The position numbers and the translations under genes were made by a program. A stretch of DNA of 64,000 nt, from the IMG/VR virus record IMGVR_UViG_3300023174_000033, positions 248,001 through 312,000 of that record; one strand, given 5' to 3'. Position 1 is the stretch's first letter. Each line of letters starts with the position of its first letter. The notes beneath the pieces are model-generated. The model was not told the DNA's origin. It did not search any database and was given only the letters and a program-made list of their open reading frames with translations. This document shows, one piece after another, positions 1 to 62,546 of the stretch.

Positions 1-1937
1 TGTTCAATGTTAGCCTCGGAAGTTAATTCCGGATATAGCCTAGCTTGAGACATGATTGATTTTTTAGAAGACTCATTGAGTTGGGACCAGATTGGCTTTA
101 TGTTTTCGGGCATCAATCTAATCAATCTTTCTTCTAGGGTTTCATCCTTAGTTGAAAGAGATTCTTGTATTAGTCTTAAAACGTCAGACTGTGAGAAGTA
201 ACTTTTTTCGTTTATATAAAGTTTAACTTGCTCTTGCTCATCAATTGATAGATTATAAAAATCATCAGATTGACGCTTGCTTAAGAATTTCAAAAAATGC
301 ATTTCATTTGTTTCGGAAACTTTACGCTTGGTTGCTTCCTGAATTAATTTATCAATTTGCTTGGATAAGTCAGTGTCAGAATTTTTCTCATATGTATGAG
401 CTTCCTCTTCTTCTTCAGAACTCCAAGCCTCCTTTTCTTCTTCACTTTCTTCGGCCATATCCATATCGGTTGGGTCCATTTCCATGTTGTTGGTTTCCTC
501 TTCCTCTGTAGCCATCAAATGTGGTAATTCTTCCTCTTCACTTTCTTCAACTTCCATAGGATTCATTTCAAATCCCATTTCCTCTAAAGTTGGAAGTGGT
601 TTTTGAGATTTACTTTCATTGATTTTACCAGAATTCAAATGCTCGGAAATCATACCAGTGTAAGAAACTGCCTTATCTAAATTTTCAGCAATATACTCTG
701 AATAAGCGATGTTGTCATCTAGGTGTTCAGCAATATACTCTGAATAAGCAATATTACCCTCAATGTGTTCAGCTAAATACTCTGCATATGCAATTGAGTT
801 ATCTAGGTGTTCAGCAATGTACTCGGAGTAAGAAATACCTCTATCTAAATTTTCAGCGATATATTCTGAATAAGCAATGTTCTTATCTAAATTTTCAGCG
901 ATATATTCTGAATAAGCAATGTTCTTATCTAAATTTTCAGCAAGATACTCAGAGTAAGAAATATTCTTATCAAGGTTCTCGGCTAGGTATTCAGAATAGT
1001 CAATATTCTTATCAAGGTTCTCGGCTAAATATTCTGTATAGTTGATAGCCTTCTCTAGGTTTTCAGCTAAATAATCATTATGAGAAATTAATTTCTGTGC
1101 AGTGGATTTCAAATTAGAATTTTCATTTACTACTAATTGTACCTTTTCAGCTAAATAATCAAGATATTTAACGATTTGAGAATTAGTACTATTTAGTTCC
1201 TCATAGTATTCTAAAAGTTGCTCTAATTTCTTTGGATTAATACTACCGCTCTTTACAGCACTTTTTACTTGATTTTTAGTGGTAGATATCTCATTGATGA
1301 GATATTTTGAATAATCCGTCAGTTGTTGTTTGGTAACGAATTCGCTCTTGTTCATATTGAATATATCATTTATTTTGGACTCATCGGACATTTCATATAT
1401 CCTAAAGTTAGCTTTGCCTGAATAGTTTAGAGACTCATTTATTGAACTCATTTTAGCTGACGCGAATCCTGGATCGGCAACAATATCATATGTGAATAAT
1501 TTCTTCAAAGTTACTGTTCCGTCGGCCTCAGTCACACCAGCTGCTCTTGAAGATACAAATACTGGACAGTTATCCTCAACTAGAGCTTTTGCTTCTTTTC
1601 CCCAATAAGTATTGAGTAATTTGATTTGACCCTCAACTCTGTTAGCTTCTTTCACAAATTTTACATTACGTACAATGTGTGAAGATCTAGATAAAGAGGT
1701 GTCAAAAACATCAGGGTGATCAAATTCACCGTATACAACACCCATTGTGTTAATTCTTTCATTTAGTTCCTGTAAACATGGAATAAATTTTTCAGCAGTA
1801 TAAATTCTTTCATTGCGGTTTTTTTTATCAAACTCTGTGAAAATACCCCCTAAAACATACTCCTTTTTACCGTTTTGATTGCTAATACTCTCCTTCAAAG
1901 GATTGGTATTATTTTCAACGATCAAGATTGGTTTCAT
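1..1937 (-). CDS. Prohead core protease (T4 gp21-like) fused to repeat-rich scaffold-like region; 3' end lies beyond the window
   Basis: Manually translated from ATG at 1937 (MKPILIVENN...); frame read at several points is open down to position 3, so the ORF track omitted it for lack of a stop. gp21 motifs seen: NRNERIY, YGEFDHP, VSSRAAG, YDIVADPGF. Confidence 0.9.
   Translation of the reverse strand, partial: MKPILIVENNTNPLKESISNQNGKKEYVLGGIFTEFDKKNRNERIYTAEKFIPCLQELNERINTMGVVYGEFDHPDVFDTSLSRSSHIVRNVKFVKEANRVEGQIKLLNTYWGKEAKALVEDNCPVFVSSRAAGVTEADGTVTLKKLFTYDIVADPGFASAKMSSINESLNYSGKANFRIYEMSDESKINDIFNMNKSEFVTKQQLTDYSKYLINEISTTKNQVKSAVKSGSINPKKLEQLLEYYEELNSTNSQIVKYLDYLAEKVQLVVNENSNLKSTAQKLISHNDYLAENLEKAINYTEYLAENLDKNIDYSEYLAENLDKNISYSEYLAENLDKNIAYSEYIAENLDKNIAYSEYIAENLDRGISYSEYIAEHLDNSIAYAEYLAEHIEGNIAYSEYIAEHLDDNIAYSEYIAENLDKAVSYTGMISEHLNSGKINESKSQKPLPTLEEMGFEMNPMEVEESEEEELPHLMATEEEETNNMEMDPTDMDMAEESEEEKEAWSSEEEEEAHTYEKNSDTDLSKQIDKLIQEATKRKVSETNEMHFLKFLSKRQSDDFYNLSIDEQEQVKLYINEKSYFSQSDVLRLIQESLSTKDETLEERLIRLMPENIKPIWSQLNESSKKSIMSQARLYPELTSEANIE
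640..1085 (-). repeat. 42-nt (14-aa) tandem coding repeat, about 10-11 copies, consensus YSEY[IL]AE[NH]LD[KR]NI[AS]
   Basis: Recurring ttttcagcgatatattctgaataagcaatgttcttatctaaa units on the + strand; translation in the protease frame. Confidence 0.9.
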
Positions 1938-5442: not shown

Positions 5443-5949
5443 ATGATTAATAGTGCGCCAAAACAATCAACAAAATACAGACAGGGATTGTATGTCCCGA
5501 GGAATCTAAATAAAGTCATAAAGCTAAATTCCCAAGGTGGATTATATTATAGGTCTGGTCTTGAACAAAAAATGATGGTATACCTTGATTCCAACGAGAA
5601 TATAATATTTTGGGGAGCAGAACACTTAAGAGTTCCATATGTAAAAACTGAATGGGTTTCTGAAACTCAGGAATTTAAAACAACTGAACACGGATATTAT
5701 CCAGACTTTTATTATGAGTTGAAACGAAGTGATGGGTCAGTATCAAGGGTGGTTGCAGAAGTAAAGCCACATTCAGAAACTATTGAACCAAAACTTCAAG
5801 AAAAACCAACCTCAAAGCAACTCAAAAACTTTGAGTATGCTTTGAAGATGTATAACAAAAATCTTAGTAAATGGAAAGCTATGATTGAATATTGTGAAAG
5901 AAAAGGTTTTGAGTTTATAATTATAACAGAACAACACCTCAAATATTAA
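5443..5949 (+). CDS. Head completion nuclease (T4 gp4-like, TnsA-type PD-(D/E)xK fold)
   Basis: YRSGLE, WGAE, YYPDF, EVKP, NLSKWKA, FIIITE motifs. Confidence 0.85.
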   Translation: MINSAPKQSTKYRQGLYVPRNLNKVIKLNSQGGLYYRSGLEQKMMVYLDSNENIIFWGAEHLRVPYVKTEWVSETQEFKTTEHGYYPDFYYELKRSDGSVSRVVAEVKPHSETIEPKLQEKPTSKQLKNFEYALKMYNKNLSKWKAMIEYCERKGFEFIIITEQHLKY

Positions 5950-6426: not shown

Positions 6427-7716
6427 TTATAGTCTTTCTTTTTCTCTTTCTTTATATTGAAGTTCTCTAATTGCTAAAATTTCCTCTTCTAAAGTATCTT
6501 TTCTCTTTCTTAAATTTCCTAATGCGATTGCTAATGAGTTTGATTCTCCAATCATTTTCATAGAACTTTCAATTTTGTGGATATTTAATTCAACATCTTC
6601 TAATTTCAAAGTAATTTCTCTTTCCTTGTCTTCTAATTTCCTCTTTGTAATTAATTCCTTACTTAAATTATTTTCATAAAAATAAGTAAGGTCGTAGTTT
6701 AATTCATTTCTTACTTCATTTACTAATTCCAATGCTGACTCATATTTGAAGAATGAATTGCCATATCTCTCATCACATCTGTAAAGATAAATAGCATTCT
6801 TATAATTAAATGCAAAAACCTCAAGATGTGGGTTAATCAAGTTAGATACTCTTTTAACAACATCCATCTCAACTAATTTGTTCAAATTATTTGAAGTCTC
6901 AAGTAAGATAGGATAAAAATTCTTGTTTACAATTGGAATGATTGGTGATGCAAATAAACTTTCAAGTGTAGTTTCTTTGTTCATTTCATCGTCATTGATA
7001 AAAAGAATACCCTTTTTCTTGGTAGAAAGTCCGATAGTAAGATTTTCAGAAATTCTGAAGTTAATTCTATCATCATCAATTGAAGCAAAACGCATTCCAA
7101 CTTCAAGATTTCTAAGAGTTCTTAATTTCTCTTGATCTTTCACATGATTTTCTAAAAGTGTTTTTTCAATATTATTTTCTGTTAAAATAAACCATGAATC
7201 TCTAACTAAACAGCAATAACCATCTTCAACCTGCTCAACAATTGTATAAACCGATTCAGATTTCCCACCAGATAATAGATTAGTTTTCTTTTCTGGTGAT
7301 TTGATAAGATTGTGTACAAATAATTTTATTTCTGGTACCCAGTCATAAATCGCTAATTCATTAAGAATTTTTGACATTCTATCTTGATCTGACTCTAAAT
7401 TAATAGTCTGTAGAAGCACATTAATAGGTTGTCTGTAAATCTGTCCTTGATTTTTACTATCTAAAATGTTGTATAAATGTTTTAATTCATAAAGTAATTG
7501 ATATTCTTTTAGATCATCATTTAATGACTCGAGTAAAAATCTTACGGATTTATCGAATGTATATGTCTTCAATGTTTCATTTAATGAGTGAATTACCTCT
7601 TTTTCTGAGGAAGAGTTTAAAGCATTGATGTGGCCTTCTACTATAGCAGAAACCTGGATATCTTCAACAGATAGGTTTTTTCTGAAGTTGAAAAGCTCTA
7701 ATTTGAGATTCTTCAT
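6427..7716 (-). CDS. Hypothetical protein with C-terminal coiled coil (probably virion or morphogenesis)
   Basis: 429-aa ORF with its own late-type promoter and terminator. Confidence 0.7.
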   Translation of the reverse strand: MKNLKLELFNFRKNLSVEDIQVSAIVEGHINALNSSSEKEVIHSLNETLKTYTFDKSVRFLLESLNDDLKEYQLLYELKHLYNILDSKNQGQIYRQPINVLLQTINLESDQDRMSKILNELAIYDWVPEIKLFVHNLIKSPEKKTNLLSGGKSESVYTIVEQVEDGYCCLVRDSWFILTENNIEKTLLENHVKDQEKLRTLRNLEVGMRFASIDDDRINFRISENLTIGLSTKKKGILFINDDEMNKETTLESLFASPIIPIVNKNFYPILLETSNNLNKLVEMDVVKRVSNLINPHLEVFAFNYKNAIYLYRCDERYGNSFFKYESALELVNEVRNELNYDLTYFYENNLSKELITKRKLEDKEREITLKLEDVELNIHKIESSMKMIGESNSLAIALGNLRKRKDTLEEEILAIRELQYKEREKERL

Positions 7717-7782: not shown

Positions 7783-9756
7783 TTATTTATTATTGAAAAA
7801 CTTTCCTGGAAATTTTGAAACATTTAAATTTTGATTCTGACCCCTTGGTACACCTATGCCCATACGCGTCATTGATTTTGTTCCCTTATTGTCATAATAC
7901 CATCTACTTCTTTTTGGATTTATGATAGTATCTTCAAATACACCACCTGATTTTCCATAATCCAAGCTATTAGAATTTGGGTCAGGTTGAAATTCCGAAA
8001 CATCCAAGGAATCACCATTGACAATTTTTTCATATTTCTCACCACCATCTGGATCAATTCCTATTGTAATTCTCAATCCATTTCTATTATTATAGACATC
8101 CATGAGAGTTCCAGTTTTACCACCTGATGGCATTGCGGTGCTTATTTTTTTCCTATCAAATCTATACCAAACTTCAATTGTCTCTGGTATACTCGGTGTA
8201 GGTACCAATTTATTTTGAATAAATGTTCCAGTTTCATAATCAAAAAACCAATCTCTTGGGTCAACTTTTTGTATTACAACGTCACTCACATCTCTTGGTA
8301 TTACTGAATAACGTATGTCGTAATTTTCAGAAATCAAATTGGTCAATCTGCTTGTGGGTTGAATATCTTCTAAAGATCCAATCCCATAAACATAAGTATC
8401 CTGAGTTATTGGGTCTATTCCATTTGGAGGTAGATATGGCCAAAAACATTGATATTCATTGTTAGTTCCATCAATTGGTCCGGAGACTATCGCTTTTACT
8501 TTCACACCGACCCCTTGATTATTTGATATTAAGGGATTACTTGAAACATTTCTTTGATATGGCATTATATCACCGGTAAATTGAGCAGTGAAAAGTTTAT
8601 TTTCTACTAGTTCAAAAACATCATCATAATCCGAATCAATTTCAACTTTCAAGAAATAAATACCATTTTTAAAATCTATAGACATCAAATTGCCTATTTG
8701 GATATTACCCAATCCAATTTCATAGTCAATTTCACTGTTACCATCTGTATTTAGATTTAAAATCTCTTCATAAAGGACCTCACCAACTTCATTATTTTGT
8801 AAAAATAAAAATCTAAAATTAAAAGATTGATTTGGAATGGGGTCCCCATTTATGTCCGTGACATATTTTTTATATCTAAAACTCGGGTGTGTATCAAAAT
8901 TTTCTGGTATAGACTGAGATACTGTATCAAAATCTTCCAAATTAAAATCAAATTTAGTACCAGACCCTATCATCAAATAAGCCATCCCATCAGAAGATGT
9001 TACGACATTGTGAAATTCTGTAAATATTATATTATCCAAATTTCCTCTAGAAATTTGAACTTTTACCGAAATTAATTTGTTAGGATATATTGTTTGGATG
9101 GGGTATGATATACTTGATGGCAAAGTAGGCTTTCTATAAGCTGGATAATATGTTTGAACATCAAAACTCAAAGTGAGTTTTATCTGATTATCAGAGGTCA
9201 TATTTTTCTCACGTTGTATCTGTATCTGATTAGTATCTGGTATCAACATTACTGCGTCAATATTCATAAAGTTATGTTCAAAGTACATAAATCTGTACAA
9301 CCAAATAGTGTCCATGATAGCTTGGCTGCATTTAAAAGTATCAATTTCACTTGTGAGGAGTATACTCATTTCATACTTGGCTGTTATCGGAATGGCACGA
9401 ATCTTGGTCAAAACTCTTCTAACCTCATCATTGTGTTCTAGAACCATCTTCAACCAAACATTGGGATTCGCAAACTCATCAGATCTAATATCATATCCAG
9501 TCAGTGTTATGTGGGCTCTTGGTATAATATCAGTGTTTAGGTCAACTAATCTATTATCCGAAACAACATCATCCGAGAATGAATCTAGTAGAAATCTTTC
9601 ATCTCCAGTAAGTGAATAATAAAAGGGAACGTTGACAATTCTATCACCAGAACTAAATCTGTTTGTCCATTTTATTTCCCCCTCAAGTGTGTCTAATACA
9701 CAAACTGTCAAGTCTCTAAAAAACGAATCCTCAAAATTAAATTTTTGACCTATCAT
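7783..9756 (-). CDS. Tail terminator / sheath stabiliser (T4 gp15-like) with about 450-aa C-terminal extension
   Basis: N-terminal FFRDL...NVPFYY...ERFL...IPRAHI...AIPITAKYEMSI resembles gp15; extension described in findings. Confidence 0.7.
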   Translation of the reverse strand: MIGQKFNFEDSFFRDLTVCVLDTLEGEIKWTNRFSSGDRIVNVPFYYSLTGDERFLLDSFSDDVVSDNRLVDLNTDIIPRAHITLTGYDIRSDEFANPNVWLKMVLEHNDEVRRVLTKIRAIPITAKYEMSILLTSEIDTFKCSQAIMDTIWLYRFMYFEHNFMNIDAVMLIPDTNQIQIQREKNMTSDNQIKLTLSFDVQTYYPAYRKPTLPSSISYPIQTIYPNKLISVKVQISRGNLDNIIFTEFHNVVTSSDGMAYLMIGSGTKFDFNLEDFDTVSQSIPENFDTHPSFRYKKYVTDINGDPIPNQSFNFRFLFLQNNEVGEVLYEEILNLNTDGNSEIDYEIGLGNIQIGNLMSIDFKNGIYFLKVEIDSDYDDVFELVENKLFTAQFTGDIMPYQRNVSSNPLISNNQGVGVKVKAIVSGPIDGTNNEYQCFWPYLPPNGIDPITQDTYVYGIGSLEDIQPTSRLTNLISENYDIRYSVIPRDVSDVVIQKVDPRDWFFDYETGTFIQNKLVPTPSIPETIEVWYRFDRKKISTAMPSGGKTGTLMDVYNNRNGLRITIGIDPDGGEKYEKIVNGDSLDVSEFQPDPNSNSLDYGKSGGVFEDTIINPKRSRWYYDNKGTKSMTRMGIGVPRGQNQNLNVSKFPGKFFNNK

Positions 9757-58242: not shown

Positions 58243-58860
58243 ATGCCATTACCTCATTTTACCCAACTCCAGATGACCGGTTCGCCAGGTTTACCAGGTA
58301 GTTTACCAGAAGAACCAGTATACCTCAACTTGTTTGAGATTACTTTCGTTCTACCAACGATTCTACAAGCACAAGGCAGAGATCCTGTTTTGATGTTACA
58401 ACAAGCAAACTCTGTTGGATTGGATTTAACACCAGCAATCGAGACTGCTGAACAGAAATTCAAGTATTCAACCAGAGCATTCATGAAGACTCCTACAAAA
58501 ACTCACGTAGACTTCAATATCAAATTCAACGTGAACGTTACCGACCAAGGTCAAATGACCGTTTGGAACACATTAAAGGCTTGGTACGATGTTGTATGGA
58601 ATTCTCAGAATGGTACAGTTGGATATAAGAGTGATATCATCGGTTCTGTTATCGTTAATCAACACGATAAGAAGGGTGTTGTCCTAAGAAGAGTTACTTT
58701 CAACTCTGTTCAAATCAAACAAGTTTCAGCAGTTGAATTAGCTTGGAACTCAAATGAAATTTTAAGTGATGTTCAGGCTGATTTCGTAGCAGATTACTGG
58801 ATTGATGAGTACATTGATGGAAACTTCACTATTACTCCTCCACTTATTTCTGGATATTAA
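58243..58860 (+). CDS. Tail tube protein (T4 gp19-like)
   Basis: NLFEITF, LKAWYD, GYKSD, VNQHDKKGVVLRRVTF, ELAW, FVADYW. Confidence 0.8.
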   Translation: MPLPHFTQLQMTGSPGLPGSLPEEPVYLNLFEITFVLPTILQAQGRDPVLMLQQANSVGLDLTPAIETAEQKFKYSTRAFMKTPTKTHVDFNIKFNVNVTDQGQMTVWNTLKAWYDVVWNSQNGTVGYKSDIIGSVIVNQHDKKGVVLRRVTFNSVQIKQVSAVELAWNSNEILSDVQADFVADYWIDEYIDGNFTITPPLISGY

Positions 58861-60854: not shown

Positions 60855-62546
60855 TTAATTTGATATTTGTATAGACATTGTAGCTGATATGTTATTAACA
60901 GTTCTATATATTTTATATTCTTTTGATATCCCATAACTATTTGTGAAAGTCATATATGTGAAATTTATATCGTTTTGGGAATATGTATAACCACTTGTTG
61001 TGCCGGCAATTGGTAGTGGGAAACCTTGGTAAGTCATTTTTGAAAAATCATAAGAAACATCATTTGGAGCCACAAAATATTTATATCCATCACTTGAAAA
61101 AGTAAATGTTCCGATTGAACTTGTAGCCAAAGTGCTTGATAGAGATAATATTTGACTAGCGGTCAAACTTGAATATGTTGAGGAGCCATAATAAACCCTC
61201 CAAGTCCAATTTATGTCATAGTTTTTATTTAAAATTACTCCATCGGTTCGCTTTAATTTCAAACGTAAATTAGTTTGACCCGGACTCGTTTTTAAATAAC
61301 TAGCTGTTGGATATGATGTGGGAAATCTGAAAGTTCCAACATTACCTACAAATCCACTACTTTGAGTAAATGGTGGGTGATAATTTAAATCATCTATTTG
61401 AAGTGTATTTGGTTCAAATTTTATTGGGTCACTCAATGTGAAACTAAATGTATATGTTCCATTTATACTGAAGCTAGCGCCAATCTCAAATAAATTATTC
61501 AATGTAGAAGTAGTCGGGCCAGTACAAGTTAGTCCTTGAATTACACCGGCACTTTCTGGATACATAAATTGTGAAAATAAATTTAAAAAACTAGTATTGT
61601 CAAATGATGTTCCTTTTTCCACGCCAGAATATGTTTGGAGTGTCTGACTAGCATTTGTATATTTGTTTGAATCTGCAACTGGATATCTTTCAAAGAATTC
61701 AAATTGATTATTTCTGAAAAGTAAGTAATAGGTCTGTGGTGTAGTAGAACCAGAGGCACCTAGAATATCTCCAGTATTTAACGTTGTTGGTTGACCATTC
61801 AAATATCTTACCACACTCACCGTACCTATATTATTAATGTTTAATGATACAGTACCTGATGTATTGGTGTTAGCAAAATCAACCAAATATAAATAATTGT
61901 TTGAATAGGTTGAAATTATTGGTCTACTATATGTTGCGTAATATGAATTTATGCCGGTAGCACTTATTCTGATGTTTTCTATGCTTCTTTCACTTAAATC
62001 AGATAATTTAGATCCTAAATAAGCATATACATCAATTCTTGAAGGAGTGCCAGATATGGTATTTTCATTTTGATAAAATACCCCACTAGAATATTGATAT
62101 AGCCAATCTCTACTACTTAAAGGATAAATTCTATTATTACTCTCATCATAGGGAATTGCAGCATATGATTCACCGTTTGAGTCAGAAATCAAATTAGTCA
62201 TCTTCTGACCGGCAGATACACCCATCAAAGATCCATATCCATATGCGTATGTCAAACCAGTTTTAAAGTCAAATCCCGTTGGTGGTTGAGTTGGCCAATA
62301 TGTTAAAAAGGCTCTATTATTTGTACCTGGTATAAGACCTAATGAAGCACTCACACCAACGGCAATACCTTGTTCAACACCTAGTGAGGCTGTAACAGGT
62401 AAATTATCCATATAAATATTTTTTGAAGGAATATTAAATGAGAATCCAATAGTTTCTTCTAATAAACTTTTGTTCAAATCCGTTTGTGATTTACCAGAAA
62501 TGTTTTTGAAGGATATTTGAGATAGTACGCTACTTGTTAAAGCCAT
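60855..62546 (-). CDS. Ser/Thr-rich virion structural protein
   Basis: 563 aa, beta-rich; shares a domain with the gp15 extension. Confidence 0.65.
   Translation of the reverse strand: MALTSSVLSQISFKNISGKSQTDLNKSLLEETIGFSFNIPSKNIYMDNLPVTASLGVEQGIAVGVSASLGLIPGTNNRAFLTYWPTQPPTGFDFKTGLTYAYGYGSLMGVSAGQKMTNLISDSNGESYAAIPYDESNNRIYPLSSRDWLYQYSSGVFYQNENTISGTPSRIDVYAYLGSKLSDLSERSIENIRISATGINSYYATYSRPIISTYSNNYLYLVDFANTNTSGTVSLNINNIGTVSVVRYLNGQPTTLNTGDILGASGSTTPQTYYLLFRNNQFEFFERYPVADSNKYTNASQTLQTYSGVEKGTSFDNTSFLNLFSQFMYPESAGVIQGLTCTGPTTSTLNNLFEIGASFSINGTYTFSFTLSDPIKFEPNTLQIDDLNYHPPFTQSSGFVGNVGTFRFPTSYPTASYLKTSPGQTNLRLKLKRTDGVILNKNYDINWTWRVYYGSSTYSSLTASQILSLSSTLATSSIGTFTFSSDGYKYFVAPNDVSYDFSKMTYQGFPLPIAGTTSGYTYSQNDINFTYMTFTNSYGISKEYKIYRTVNNISATMSIQISN

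What the first reader, a model, noticed from the sequence alone, without database searches (positions are those of the whole stretch)
8159..8520. gp15 extension carries a ~120-aa domain paralogous to the structural protein at 60855-62546
Seen: gp15 QGVGVKV...GTNNEYQCFWPYLPPNGIDPITQDTYVYGIGSL...TNLISENYDIRYSVIPRD...RDWFFDYETGTFIQN...PETIEV aligns colinearly with QGIAVGV...GTNNRAFLTYWPTQPPTGFDFKTGLTYAYGYGSL...TNLISDSNGESYAAIPYD...RDWLYQYSSGVFYQN...PSRIDV (about 62012-62375), 54 kb away. Inference: an intragenomic domain graft gives the neck a docking or decoration module otherwise used in the fibre cluster, perhaps for collar fibres or for holding retracted fibres.
Basis: seen in the sequence. 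Interest (0 to 1): 0.6.

Follow-up and report, generated by a model that had tools for sequence, protein, structure and literature searches.

The report
Tail-fibre domain inserted into gp15
In this 465-kb uncultured phage, the protein that caps the tail sheath carries a roughly 405-residue insert whose last module is a copy of a domain otherwise found only near the start of the phage's tail-fibre-like protein; the match is real and inherited in several lineages, but its function is not shown.

Summary
P0001 (window 7783-9756, minus strand, 657 aa) residues 414-536 match P0002 (60855-62546, minus strand, 563 aa) residues 59-180. Identity is 39% and E is 7e-21. These are the only two copies in the 464,605-bp genome.

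The host protein is a distant T4 gp15 relative (tail terminator / sheath stabiliser).

The extra sequence is an insertion, not a C-terminal extension. About 405 residues sit between two motifs kept in every relative of 234-704 aa: YYPAYRK (203-209) and PKRSRWY (614-620). The AlphaFold model and the repeat pattern give this order:
- a split beta-sandwich (212-265 plus 545-598)
- a second beta-sandwich (289-400)
- the fibre-type domain (408-540)

Relatives form a size series: about 250-330 aa with no module, about 376 aa with one sandwich, 464 aa with two, and about 650 aa with two plus the fibre domain. The last form occurs in 5 protein clusters.

In 171 other representative proteins the domain lies almost always at residues about 53-185 of fibre-like proteins of 130-2226 aa. 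The gp15 copies form one clade (support 100/99), so there was one old graft. The window's own fibre gene is not their nearest relative. The graft lacks the fibre family's conserved first 52 residues.

Function is inferred only: six displayed arms below the neck. It is a new variant of known phage domain shuffling.

The parts
7783..9756 (-). Gene for P0001, the long gp15-like tail terminator (657 aa plus stop)
   Evidence: ORF list. Four further full-length versions of 649-662 aa come from independent metagenomes. Synteny with the clamp-loader gene and the 429-aa gene is kept in relatives.
9127..9756 (-). gp15-like ring core, residues 1-210, ending in the YYPAYRK motif (203-209, nt 9130-9150)
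   Evidence: 938 homologues of 118-376 aa plus 242 of 361-1150 aa. Near homologues pass PF16724. Family profile against T4 gp15 gives E 6e-8. hhalign aligns 27-206 with T4 23-201. The fold was not confirmed, because model pLDDT is 30-55 here.
8893..9123 (-). First half of beta-sandwich A (residues 212-288; confident part 212-265)
   Evidence: Shared with the roughly 376-aa relatives such as P0056. The model pairs it with residues 545-598; structural matches span 212..598 with about 90 aligned residues.
8557..8892 (-). Beta-sandwich B (residues 289-400), an internal repeat of sandwich A
8137..8535 (-).
   Evidence: BLASTP against P0002 gives E 7e-21. Model pLDDT is 89-96. 25 of 43 fibre-family conserved columns are kept in the gp15 copies. 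The gp15 copies are monophyletic at 100/99.
7957..8127 (-). Second half of beta-sandwich A (residues 544-600)
   Evidence: Aligns with P0056 265-346 at E 9e-10. pLDDT is 76-93 at 555-590.
7786..7956 (-). Conserved C-terminal tail (residues 601-657) with the PKRSRWY motif (614-620, nt 7897-7917); presumed sheath-binding segment
   Evidence: The motif is present in all size classes shown, 234-662 aa, and lies only about 8 residues after the core in the shortest forms. The sheath-binding role is inferred by position from T4 gp15 209-272 (PMC12929629).
60855..62546 (-). Gene for P0002, a tail-fibre-like protein (563 aa), the only full member of the fibre N-module family in this genome
62391..62546 (-). 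Conserved N-terminal segment of the fibre family (residues 1-52), absent from gp15
   Evidence: K14 and E31 are invariant in 33 sequences. A profile search finds it only here in the genome.
61995..62390 (-). Globular domain of P0002 (residues 53-184), homologous to P0001 408-540

Best explanation
P0001 is the phage's gp15-type tail terminator, the ring that caps the contractile sheath and joins it to the neck. It carries a roughly 405-residue nested insertion.

The insertion sits exactly where T4 gp15 passes from its ring core (1-208) to its sheath-binding C-terminal domain (209-272). It lies between two motifs kept in all relatives, YYPAYRK and PKRSRWY. Its layout is a split beta-sandwich A, then beta-sandwich B inside it, then one globular domain copied from the N-proximal part of the phage group's tail-fibre family.

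It was built stepwise. Relatives carry no module, one sandwich, two sandwiches, or two sandwiches plus the fibre domain. The fibre domain was grafted once, long ago, and has been kept as an open frame in at least five lineages.

By analogy with the T4 gp15 hexamer, the virion would carry six short arms at the top of the sheath, just below the neck, each ending in the fibre-type domain.

Shown: the homology, the insertion site, the module order, the single origin and the retention. Inferred: the hexamer, outward display and function.

My preferred function is an accessory surface-displayed binding or decoration arm of the kind that Ig-like modules provide on many phage structural proteins. The graft lacks the fibre family's conserved 52-residue N-terminal segment, which I take to be the fibre's virion anchor. 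It does not need that segment because it is already covalently attached.

The anatomy is about 0.85 likely. The decoration or adhesion role is about 0.35.
For: - Homology of the two domains: E 7e-21, with only two copies in the genome.
- gp15 identity of the core: plus the top shape match in the atlas search and the T4-like morphogenesis context with portal, terminase and clamp loader and gp23 in a relative.
- Insertion, not extension: both flanking motifs are kept in all size classes shown.
- Size series and module content.
- Nested layout: model pLDDT and structural matches spanning 212..598 and 289..396.
- Usual context of the domain: residues about 53-185 in nearly all of 171 representatives of 130-2226 aa.
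- Single origin: clade support 100/99.
- Constraint: identity to P0004 and P0005 is 42-44% in the domain against 88% in the core, with the frame intact; 25 of 43 fibre-conserved columns are kept.
- A phage with a short gp15 (271 aa) still has a P0002 orthologue, so the graft is the derived state.
- T4 gp15 domain boundaries and the sheath handshake: PMC12929629.
Against: - The core's fold and its hexameric state were not confirmed, because model pLDDT is 30-55 there.
- No fold match was obtained for the shared domain. It was never folded alone, and the hit lists were filled by the beta-sandwiches.
- No ligand or partner is known.
- An N-proximal fibre domain is not where host-binding activity normally sits, which weakens the adhesion reading.
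- The complex prediction gave no answer.
- The equivalence of the C-terminal motif to a sheath-binding strand rests on position only.
Confidence: 0.55

Rival explanations
1. Fibre dock or whisker. The gp15-borne domain keeps a protein-protein surface of the fibre family. It uses that surface to recruit P0002 or another fibre to the neck, or to hold folded-back fibres, as a built-in counterpart of the T4 fibritin whiskers.
For: - In its native context the domain is the virion-proximal part of fibre-like proteins, so its natural partners should be phage proteins.
- 25 of 43 family-conserved columns are retained.
- It lies deepest in the nested insert, carried on the two sandwich modules.
- No fibritin homologue was detected in the genome. 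This is weak evidence, because fibritin is poorly conserved.
Against: - The most conserved, presumed anchoring segment (residues 1-52) was not grafted.
- No other gene in the genome carries an orphan N-segment or a third copy that could pair with it.
- Six family-conserved positions are lost in the gp15 copies, including the YQY motif and the terminal Y.G..L.
- The complex prediction of P0001 400-545 with P0002 1-190 scored 0.00, which counts as no answer, not as evidence.
Confidence: 0.2
2. Mechanical brace. The six inserts pack against each other, the neck proteins or the capsid floor, and so stiffen the neck-sheath joint of a very large virion. This would extend the trend seen in T4, where gp15 gained a larger C-terminal domain for a stronger connection.
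For: - The insertion lies in the segment that links the ring to the sheath.
- PMC12929629 argues that T4 gp15 gained its C-terminal domain for reinforcement.
- If fibre N-proximal domains oligomerise, the six copies could contact each other.
Against: - Close relatives with comparably large or larger genomes (634-642 kb) have gp15 of only 271 and 326 aa, so genome size does not require the insert.
- The insert evolves much faster than the core, which is more typical of exposed accessory modules than of load-bearing contacts.
Confidence: 0.12
3. A tolerated passenger with no selected function. The core to C-tail junction is simply a permissive site that accumulates modules by recombination.
For: - Many different insert lengths and contents occur at the same site, giving proteins of 234-704 aa.
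- Most relatives do without any insert.
Against: - The open frame and 25 of 43 conserved columns persist across lineages that have diverged to 42-44% identity in the domain.
- An unselected 133-residue segment would not stay intact, or keep its fold-defining residues, at that divergence.
Confidence: 0.08

Closest known systems
T4 gp15 tail terminator / tail sheath stabiliser (Pfam PF16724; in situ structure described in PMC12929629)
   Same: The core of about 210 residues is remotely homologous and colinear. It lies in a T4-like morphogenesis gene set. A C-terminal segment follows the core, as in T4, where residues 209-272 bind the top sheath ring.
   Different: About 405 residues of three extra modules sit between the core and the C-terminal segment. 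The C-terminal segment itself shows no detectable similarity to the T4 C-terminal domain. P0001's own sequence does not reach the Pfam threshold.
N-terminal module of an unnamed tail-fibre-like protein family of megaphages (P0002, P0126-P0186; orthologues in LR756500-LR756503)
   Same: The globular domain is homologous at 31-39% identity, and 25 of 43 conserved columns are kept.
   Different: In the family the domain follows a conserved 52-residue N-terminal segment and precedes a variable distal part. In gp15 it has neither, and it is embedded inside another domain.
Ig-like and other beta-sandwich decoration modules added to phage structural proteins (for example T4 Hoc; my own knowledge of Fraser et al. 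2006, not read here)
   Different: Here they are nested in an internal junction of the tail terminator and carry a further fibre-derived domain. No carbohydrate-binding or adhesion activity has been shown.
T4 fibritin (wac) collar and whiskers on the neck
   Same: This is a possible functional analogy only: fibre-related material displayed around the neck-tail junction in multiples of six (PMC12929629).
   Different: Fibritin is a separate trimeric coiled-coil protein bound to gp13. Here the module is part of the gp15 chain itself. There is no sequence similarity, and no wac homologue was detected.

Membership tests
T4 gp15 tail terminator (PF16724) | Sequence match to the family model | tested here: inconclusive
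   [not shown]
T4 gp15 tail terminator (PF16724) | Tube-protein-like fold forming a hexameric ring on top of the tail | tested here: inconclusive
   The AlphaFold model has pLDDT 30-55 over residues 1-210. The atlas shape search puts a PF16724 cluster first, but with TM of only 0.21/0.36. The oligomeric state was not tested.
T4 gp15 tail terminator (PF16724) | [quoted passage not shown] | not testable with these tools
   A conserved PK[KR][TS][RK]WY motif follows the core in all size classes shown. Its role is inferred by position from T4.
T4 gp15 tail terminator (PF16724) | Location in a T4-type head and tail morphogenesis gene set | tested here: met
   The window holds a T4-type portal (E 7e-59), a terminase large subunit (E 1.8e-22) and a gp44 clamp loader. 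The same order, plus gp23, is found in a relative.
Megaphage fibre N-module family (P0002-like) | Globular domain at about residues 53-185 | tested here: met
   Both P0002 and P0001 408-540 match the domain profile.
Megaphage fibre N-module family (P0002-like) | Conserved N-terminal segment (residues 1-52; K14 and E31 invariant) | tested here: not met
   It is present in P0002 only. A genome-wide profile search finds no second copy, and the residues before P0001 408 do not match. The gp15 copy is therefore a domain homologue, not a member with the family's architecture.
Megaphage fibre N-module family (P0002-like) | Domain at the N-terminus, followed by a variable distal part | tested here: not met
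   In nearly all of the 150 listed hits the domain lies at about 53-190. In P0001 it lies at 408-540, inside another domain.
T4 fibritin / whisker | Sequence similarity to wac | tested here: not met
   No match to T4 wac in the genome at E <= 1. That search had no positive control, so absence of a homologue is not shown.

The most novel reading that the evidence does not exclude
The long gp15 is a built-in whisker. A sublineage of megaphages fused a fibre-derived docking head onto its tail terminator through a two-sandwich stalk. As a result, the neck-sheath junction itself recruits or holds the phage's tail fibres. In T4 this job needs a separate protein, fibritin.
Probability: 0.15. Interest if true: 0.6.

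Novelty: new variant of a known kind. Interest (0 to 1): 0.4.

Why it matters
Tail terminators are usually treated as compact, conserved adaptors. In this megaphage group, the junction between the ring core and the sheath-binding tail of gp15 is a hot spot where display modules accumulate step by step. One lineage has placed a fibre-derived domain there.

This gives a dated, stepwise example of module accretion in a virion protein. It also marks a permissive site that could be used to display foreign domains on myophage tails. If the arms prove to bind fibres, it would be an alternative solution to the whisker function of T4. These phages are uncultured, so for now the value is comparative and hypothesis-generating.

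Tried and rejected
- **Direct family searches.** Pfam, PHROGs and PDB-sequence searches with P0001, P0002 and their pieces found nothing. A 38-sequence profile of the fibre N-module also found no solved relative; the best hit was E 1.4.
- **First composite alignment.** The first alignment made for folding P0001 (A5) scattered the fibre fragments across the protein. I tested MAFFT settings offline and used a smaller set that aligned correctly (A6).
- **Fold searches.** Both full-length models were searched in PDB by Foldseek or VIA-align, and P0002 also in BFVD. The PDB lists were filled by the beta-sandwich domains, and none that reports aligned ranges gave a match for the shared domain. I therefore make no claim that its fold is new.
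- **Atlas searches.** The ESM Atlas feature and shape search with P0002 1-188 gave only unnamed viral clusters. One cluster carries PF26696, which is not in the local Pfam copy.
- **Complex prediction.** P0001 400-545 with P0002 1-190 gave no answer (score 0.00). This is not evidence either way.
- **Orphan N-segment.** A search for genes with the fibre N-terminal segment but without the globular domain, as possible trans partners of the gp15 copy, found none. The sandwich modules have no other copy in the genome.
- **Neck components.** Searches for T4 wac and the T4 neck-protein family in the genome found nothing. They had no positive control, so they are uninformative.
- **dN/dS.** This was not computed on the insert. 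No DNA was available for the closest relative, P0003, and the other pairs are too diverged.
- **Donor lineage.** Tracing the nearest fibre relative, P0127, failed because it lies on a 4.1-kb contig.

Full report
**Source of the window.** The window is bases 248001-312000 of a single 464,605-bp virus record that CheckV rates 98% complete. Its closest GenBank relatives are the uncultured megaphages LR745206 and LR756500-LR756504, of 462-735 kb. LR756502 and LR745206 came from a French freshwater lake and a Japanese subsurface sample (PMC9723777). The window holds a T4-type morphogenesis set: portal (E 7e-59), terminase large subunit, a weak prohead-protease match below Pfam's cut-off, and a gp44-type clamp loader. 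All reading frames are open under the standard bacterial code. No other code was used.

**The observation.** The ORF at 7783-9756 (minus strand) encodes P0001, 657 aa. The ORF at 60855-62546 (minus strand) encodes P0002, 563 aa. BLASTP gives one strong colinear match, P0001 414-536 against P0002 59-180, with 39% identity over 124 columns and E 7e-21. Every other segment pair has E above 2. A six-frame search of the whole genome finds only these two copies.

**Is the host protein gp15?** P0001 has no hit of its own in Pfam, PHROGs or PDB sequences. Its first 215 residues do have 938 homologues of 118-376 aa. Several of these, about 80% identical to P0001, pass the curated cut-off of PF16724 (T4-gp15_tss) at 26 bits and E about 6e-6. 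A profile built from 226 cores matches T4 gp15 with E 6e-8 in a single planned comparison. hhalign aligns residues 27-206 with T4 23-201. The atlas shape search puts a PF16724 cluster first, although the TM-score is low. The flanking genes, the clamp loader on one side and a 429-aa protein on the other, are the same in relatives. I accept the gp15 assignment as remote homology. The fold was not confirmed, because the model is poor in this part, with pLDDT 30-55.

**An insertion, not an extension.** The relatives LR756502 and LR745206 have gp15 of 271 and 326 aa. After the core, both still carry a motif of the form PKRTRWF. Across all size classes shown (234-662 aa), the core ends in YYPA[YF]RK and a motif PK[KR][TS][RK]WY follows. 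In the shortest forms the gap between them is about 8 residues. In P0001 the motifs lie at 203-209 and 614-620. [quoted passage not shown] Other myophages use a short C-terminal strand for the same handshake (PMC12929629). The roughly 405 extra residues therefore lie in the link between the ring and the sheath handshake. That the conserved C-terminal motif is the handshake segment is inferred from position only.

**What the insert contains.**
- The AlphaFold model of P0001 was made from an alignment that I checked for correct placement of the fibre fragments. It is confident for 212-265, 292-350, 367-389, 405-535 (pLDDT 89-96) and 555-590.
- Sequence agrees with this. The roughly 376-aa relatives such as P0056 have one sandwich. 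Its first half aligns with P0001 212-292 and its second half with 544-620. P0001 319-384 is an internal repeat of it.
- The 464-aa relative P0278 has two sandwiches and no fibre domain.
- The order is therefore: core, sandwich A first half, sandwich B, fibre-type domain, sandwich A second half, C-terminal tail.

**A size series at a hot spot.** The 602-aa and 704-aa forms have other content. The junction is thus a hot spot for module gain.

**What was grafted, and when.**
- The fibre family's first 52 residues are its most conserved part; K14 and E31 are invariant in 33 sequences. This segment is not present in gp15. In the genome it occurs only in P0002.
- Of 43 columns conserved in the fibre copies, the gp15 copies keep 25, keep 12 in part and lose 6. 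The losses include the YQY motif and the residues that lead into the next fibre domain.
- In a maximum-likelihood tree of 37 domain sequences, the four gp15 copies form one clade (100/99) on a long stem. That clade is weakly sister (88/76) to the fibre protein P0127, not to the window's P0002.
- LR756502 has a short gp15 and a P0002 orthologue, so the graft is the derived state.
- The graft happened once in an ancestor of these lineages and has been inherited since. The donor was a fibre gene of this family, but whether it came from the same genome cannot be told.
- Identity of P0001 to P0004 and P0005 is 88% in the core and 42-44% in the domain, with the frame intact. The domain is fast-evolving but constrained.

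**Function.** Nothing here measures function. By analogy with T4, the ring would have six subunits, so the virion would carry six arms at the top of the sheath, each a two-sandwich stalk with the fibre-type domain nested deepest in the insert. I favour an accessory displayed binding or decoration arm, for three reasons:
- Close relatives gain and lose sandwich modules at the same site, as is typical of Ig-like decorations on phage proteins.
- The insert evolves much faster than the core.
- Relatives with larger genomes manage without it.

However, the presumed anchoring segment was not grafted, no candidate trans partner exists in the genome, and the one complex prediction gave no answer. A bracing role and a neutral passenger are less likely, for the reasons given under the rival explanations.

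**Novelty and verdict.** Domain shuffling among phage structural proteins, and the addition of Ig-like modules to them, are both well known. I did not find in the papers I searched a tail terminator carrying a nested multi-module insert that includes a fibre-derived domain. I rate it a new variant of a known kind. Interest is moderate.

Noticed in passing
P0288 (704 aa), P0283 (602 aa), and P0281/P0285/P0290/P0291 (492-495 aa): Other long gp15 variants in the same phage group have inserts at the same junction but lack the fibre-type domain. Their content beyond partial sandwich repeats was not worked out.
   Followed up: partly
window 6427-7716 (-): A 429-aa protein lies next to gp15 in the window and in three relatives. 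It has no Pfam or PHROG hit and a coiled-coil-like C-terminus. By position it is a candidate neck protein.
   Followed up: partly
[not shown]
   Followed up: partly
window 18396-56130: Five very large ORFs of 1380-3083 aa, and one of 912 aa, lie between the packaging genes and the fibre cluster. The three largest (3083, 2459 and 1999 aa) have no Pfam hit at E <= 0.001.
   Followed up: partly
window 58243-58860 (+): A 205-aa protein has a weak tail-tube match (phrog_45, E 6.5e-7). It sits about 2 kb from the P0002 gene.
   Followed up: no
L006 13853-14359 (-); syntenic window ORF 5443-5949 (+): In the relative, a 168-aa Tn7 TnsA-like N-domain protein lies between the 429-aa gene and the portal gene. 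The window has a 168-aa ORF at the same place. It may be a nuclease or a mobile-element remnant inside the morphogenesis module.
   Followed up: no
P0001 residues 282-400 (window 8557-8913): In the ESM Atlas shape search, sandwich B resembles domains of collagen-like and baseplate-like proteins labelled Bacteroidota (rmsd 2.9-3.5 over 111-118 residues). This is a faint hint about host or gene-pool affiliation.
   Followed up: no
L001 6989-8065 (-) and L002 7416-8513 (-): Both megaphage relatives encode a protein of about 360 aa, a few kb from gp15, that by eye looks like a glutamine synthetase. It was not checked with any tool and was not looked for in the window.
   Followed up: no
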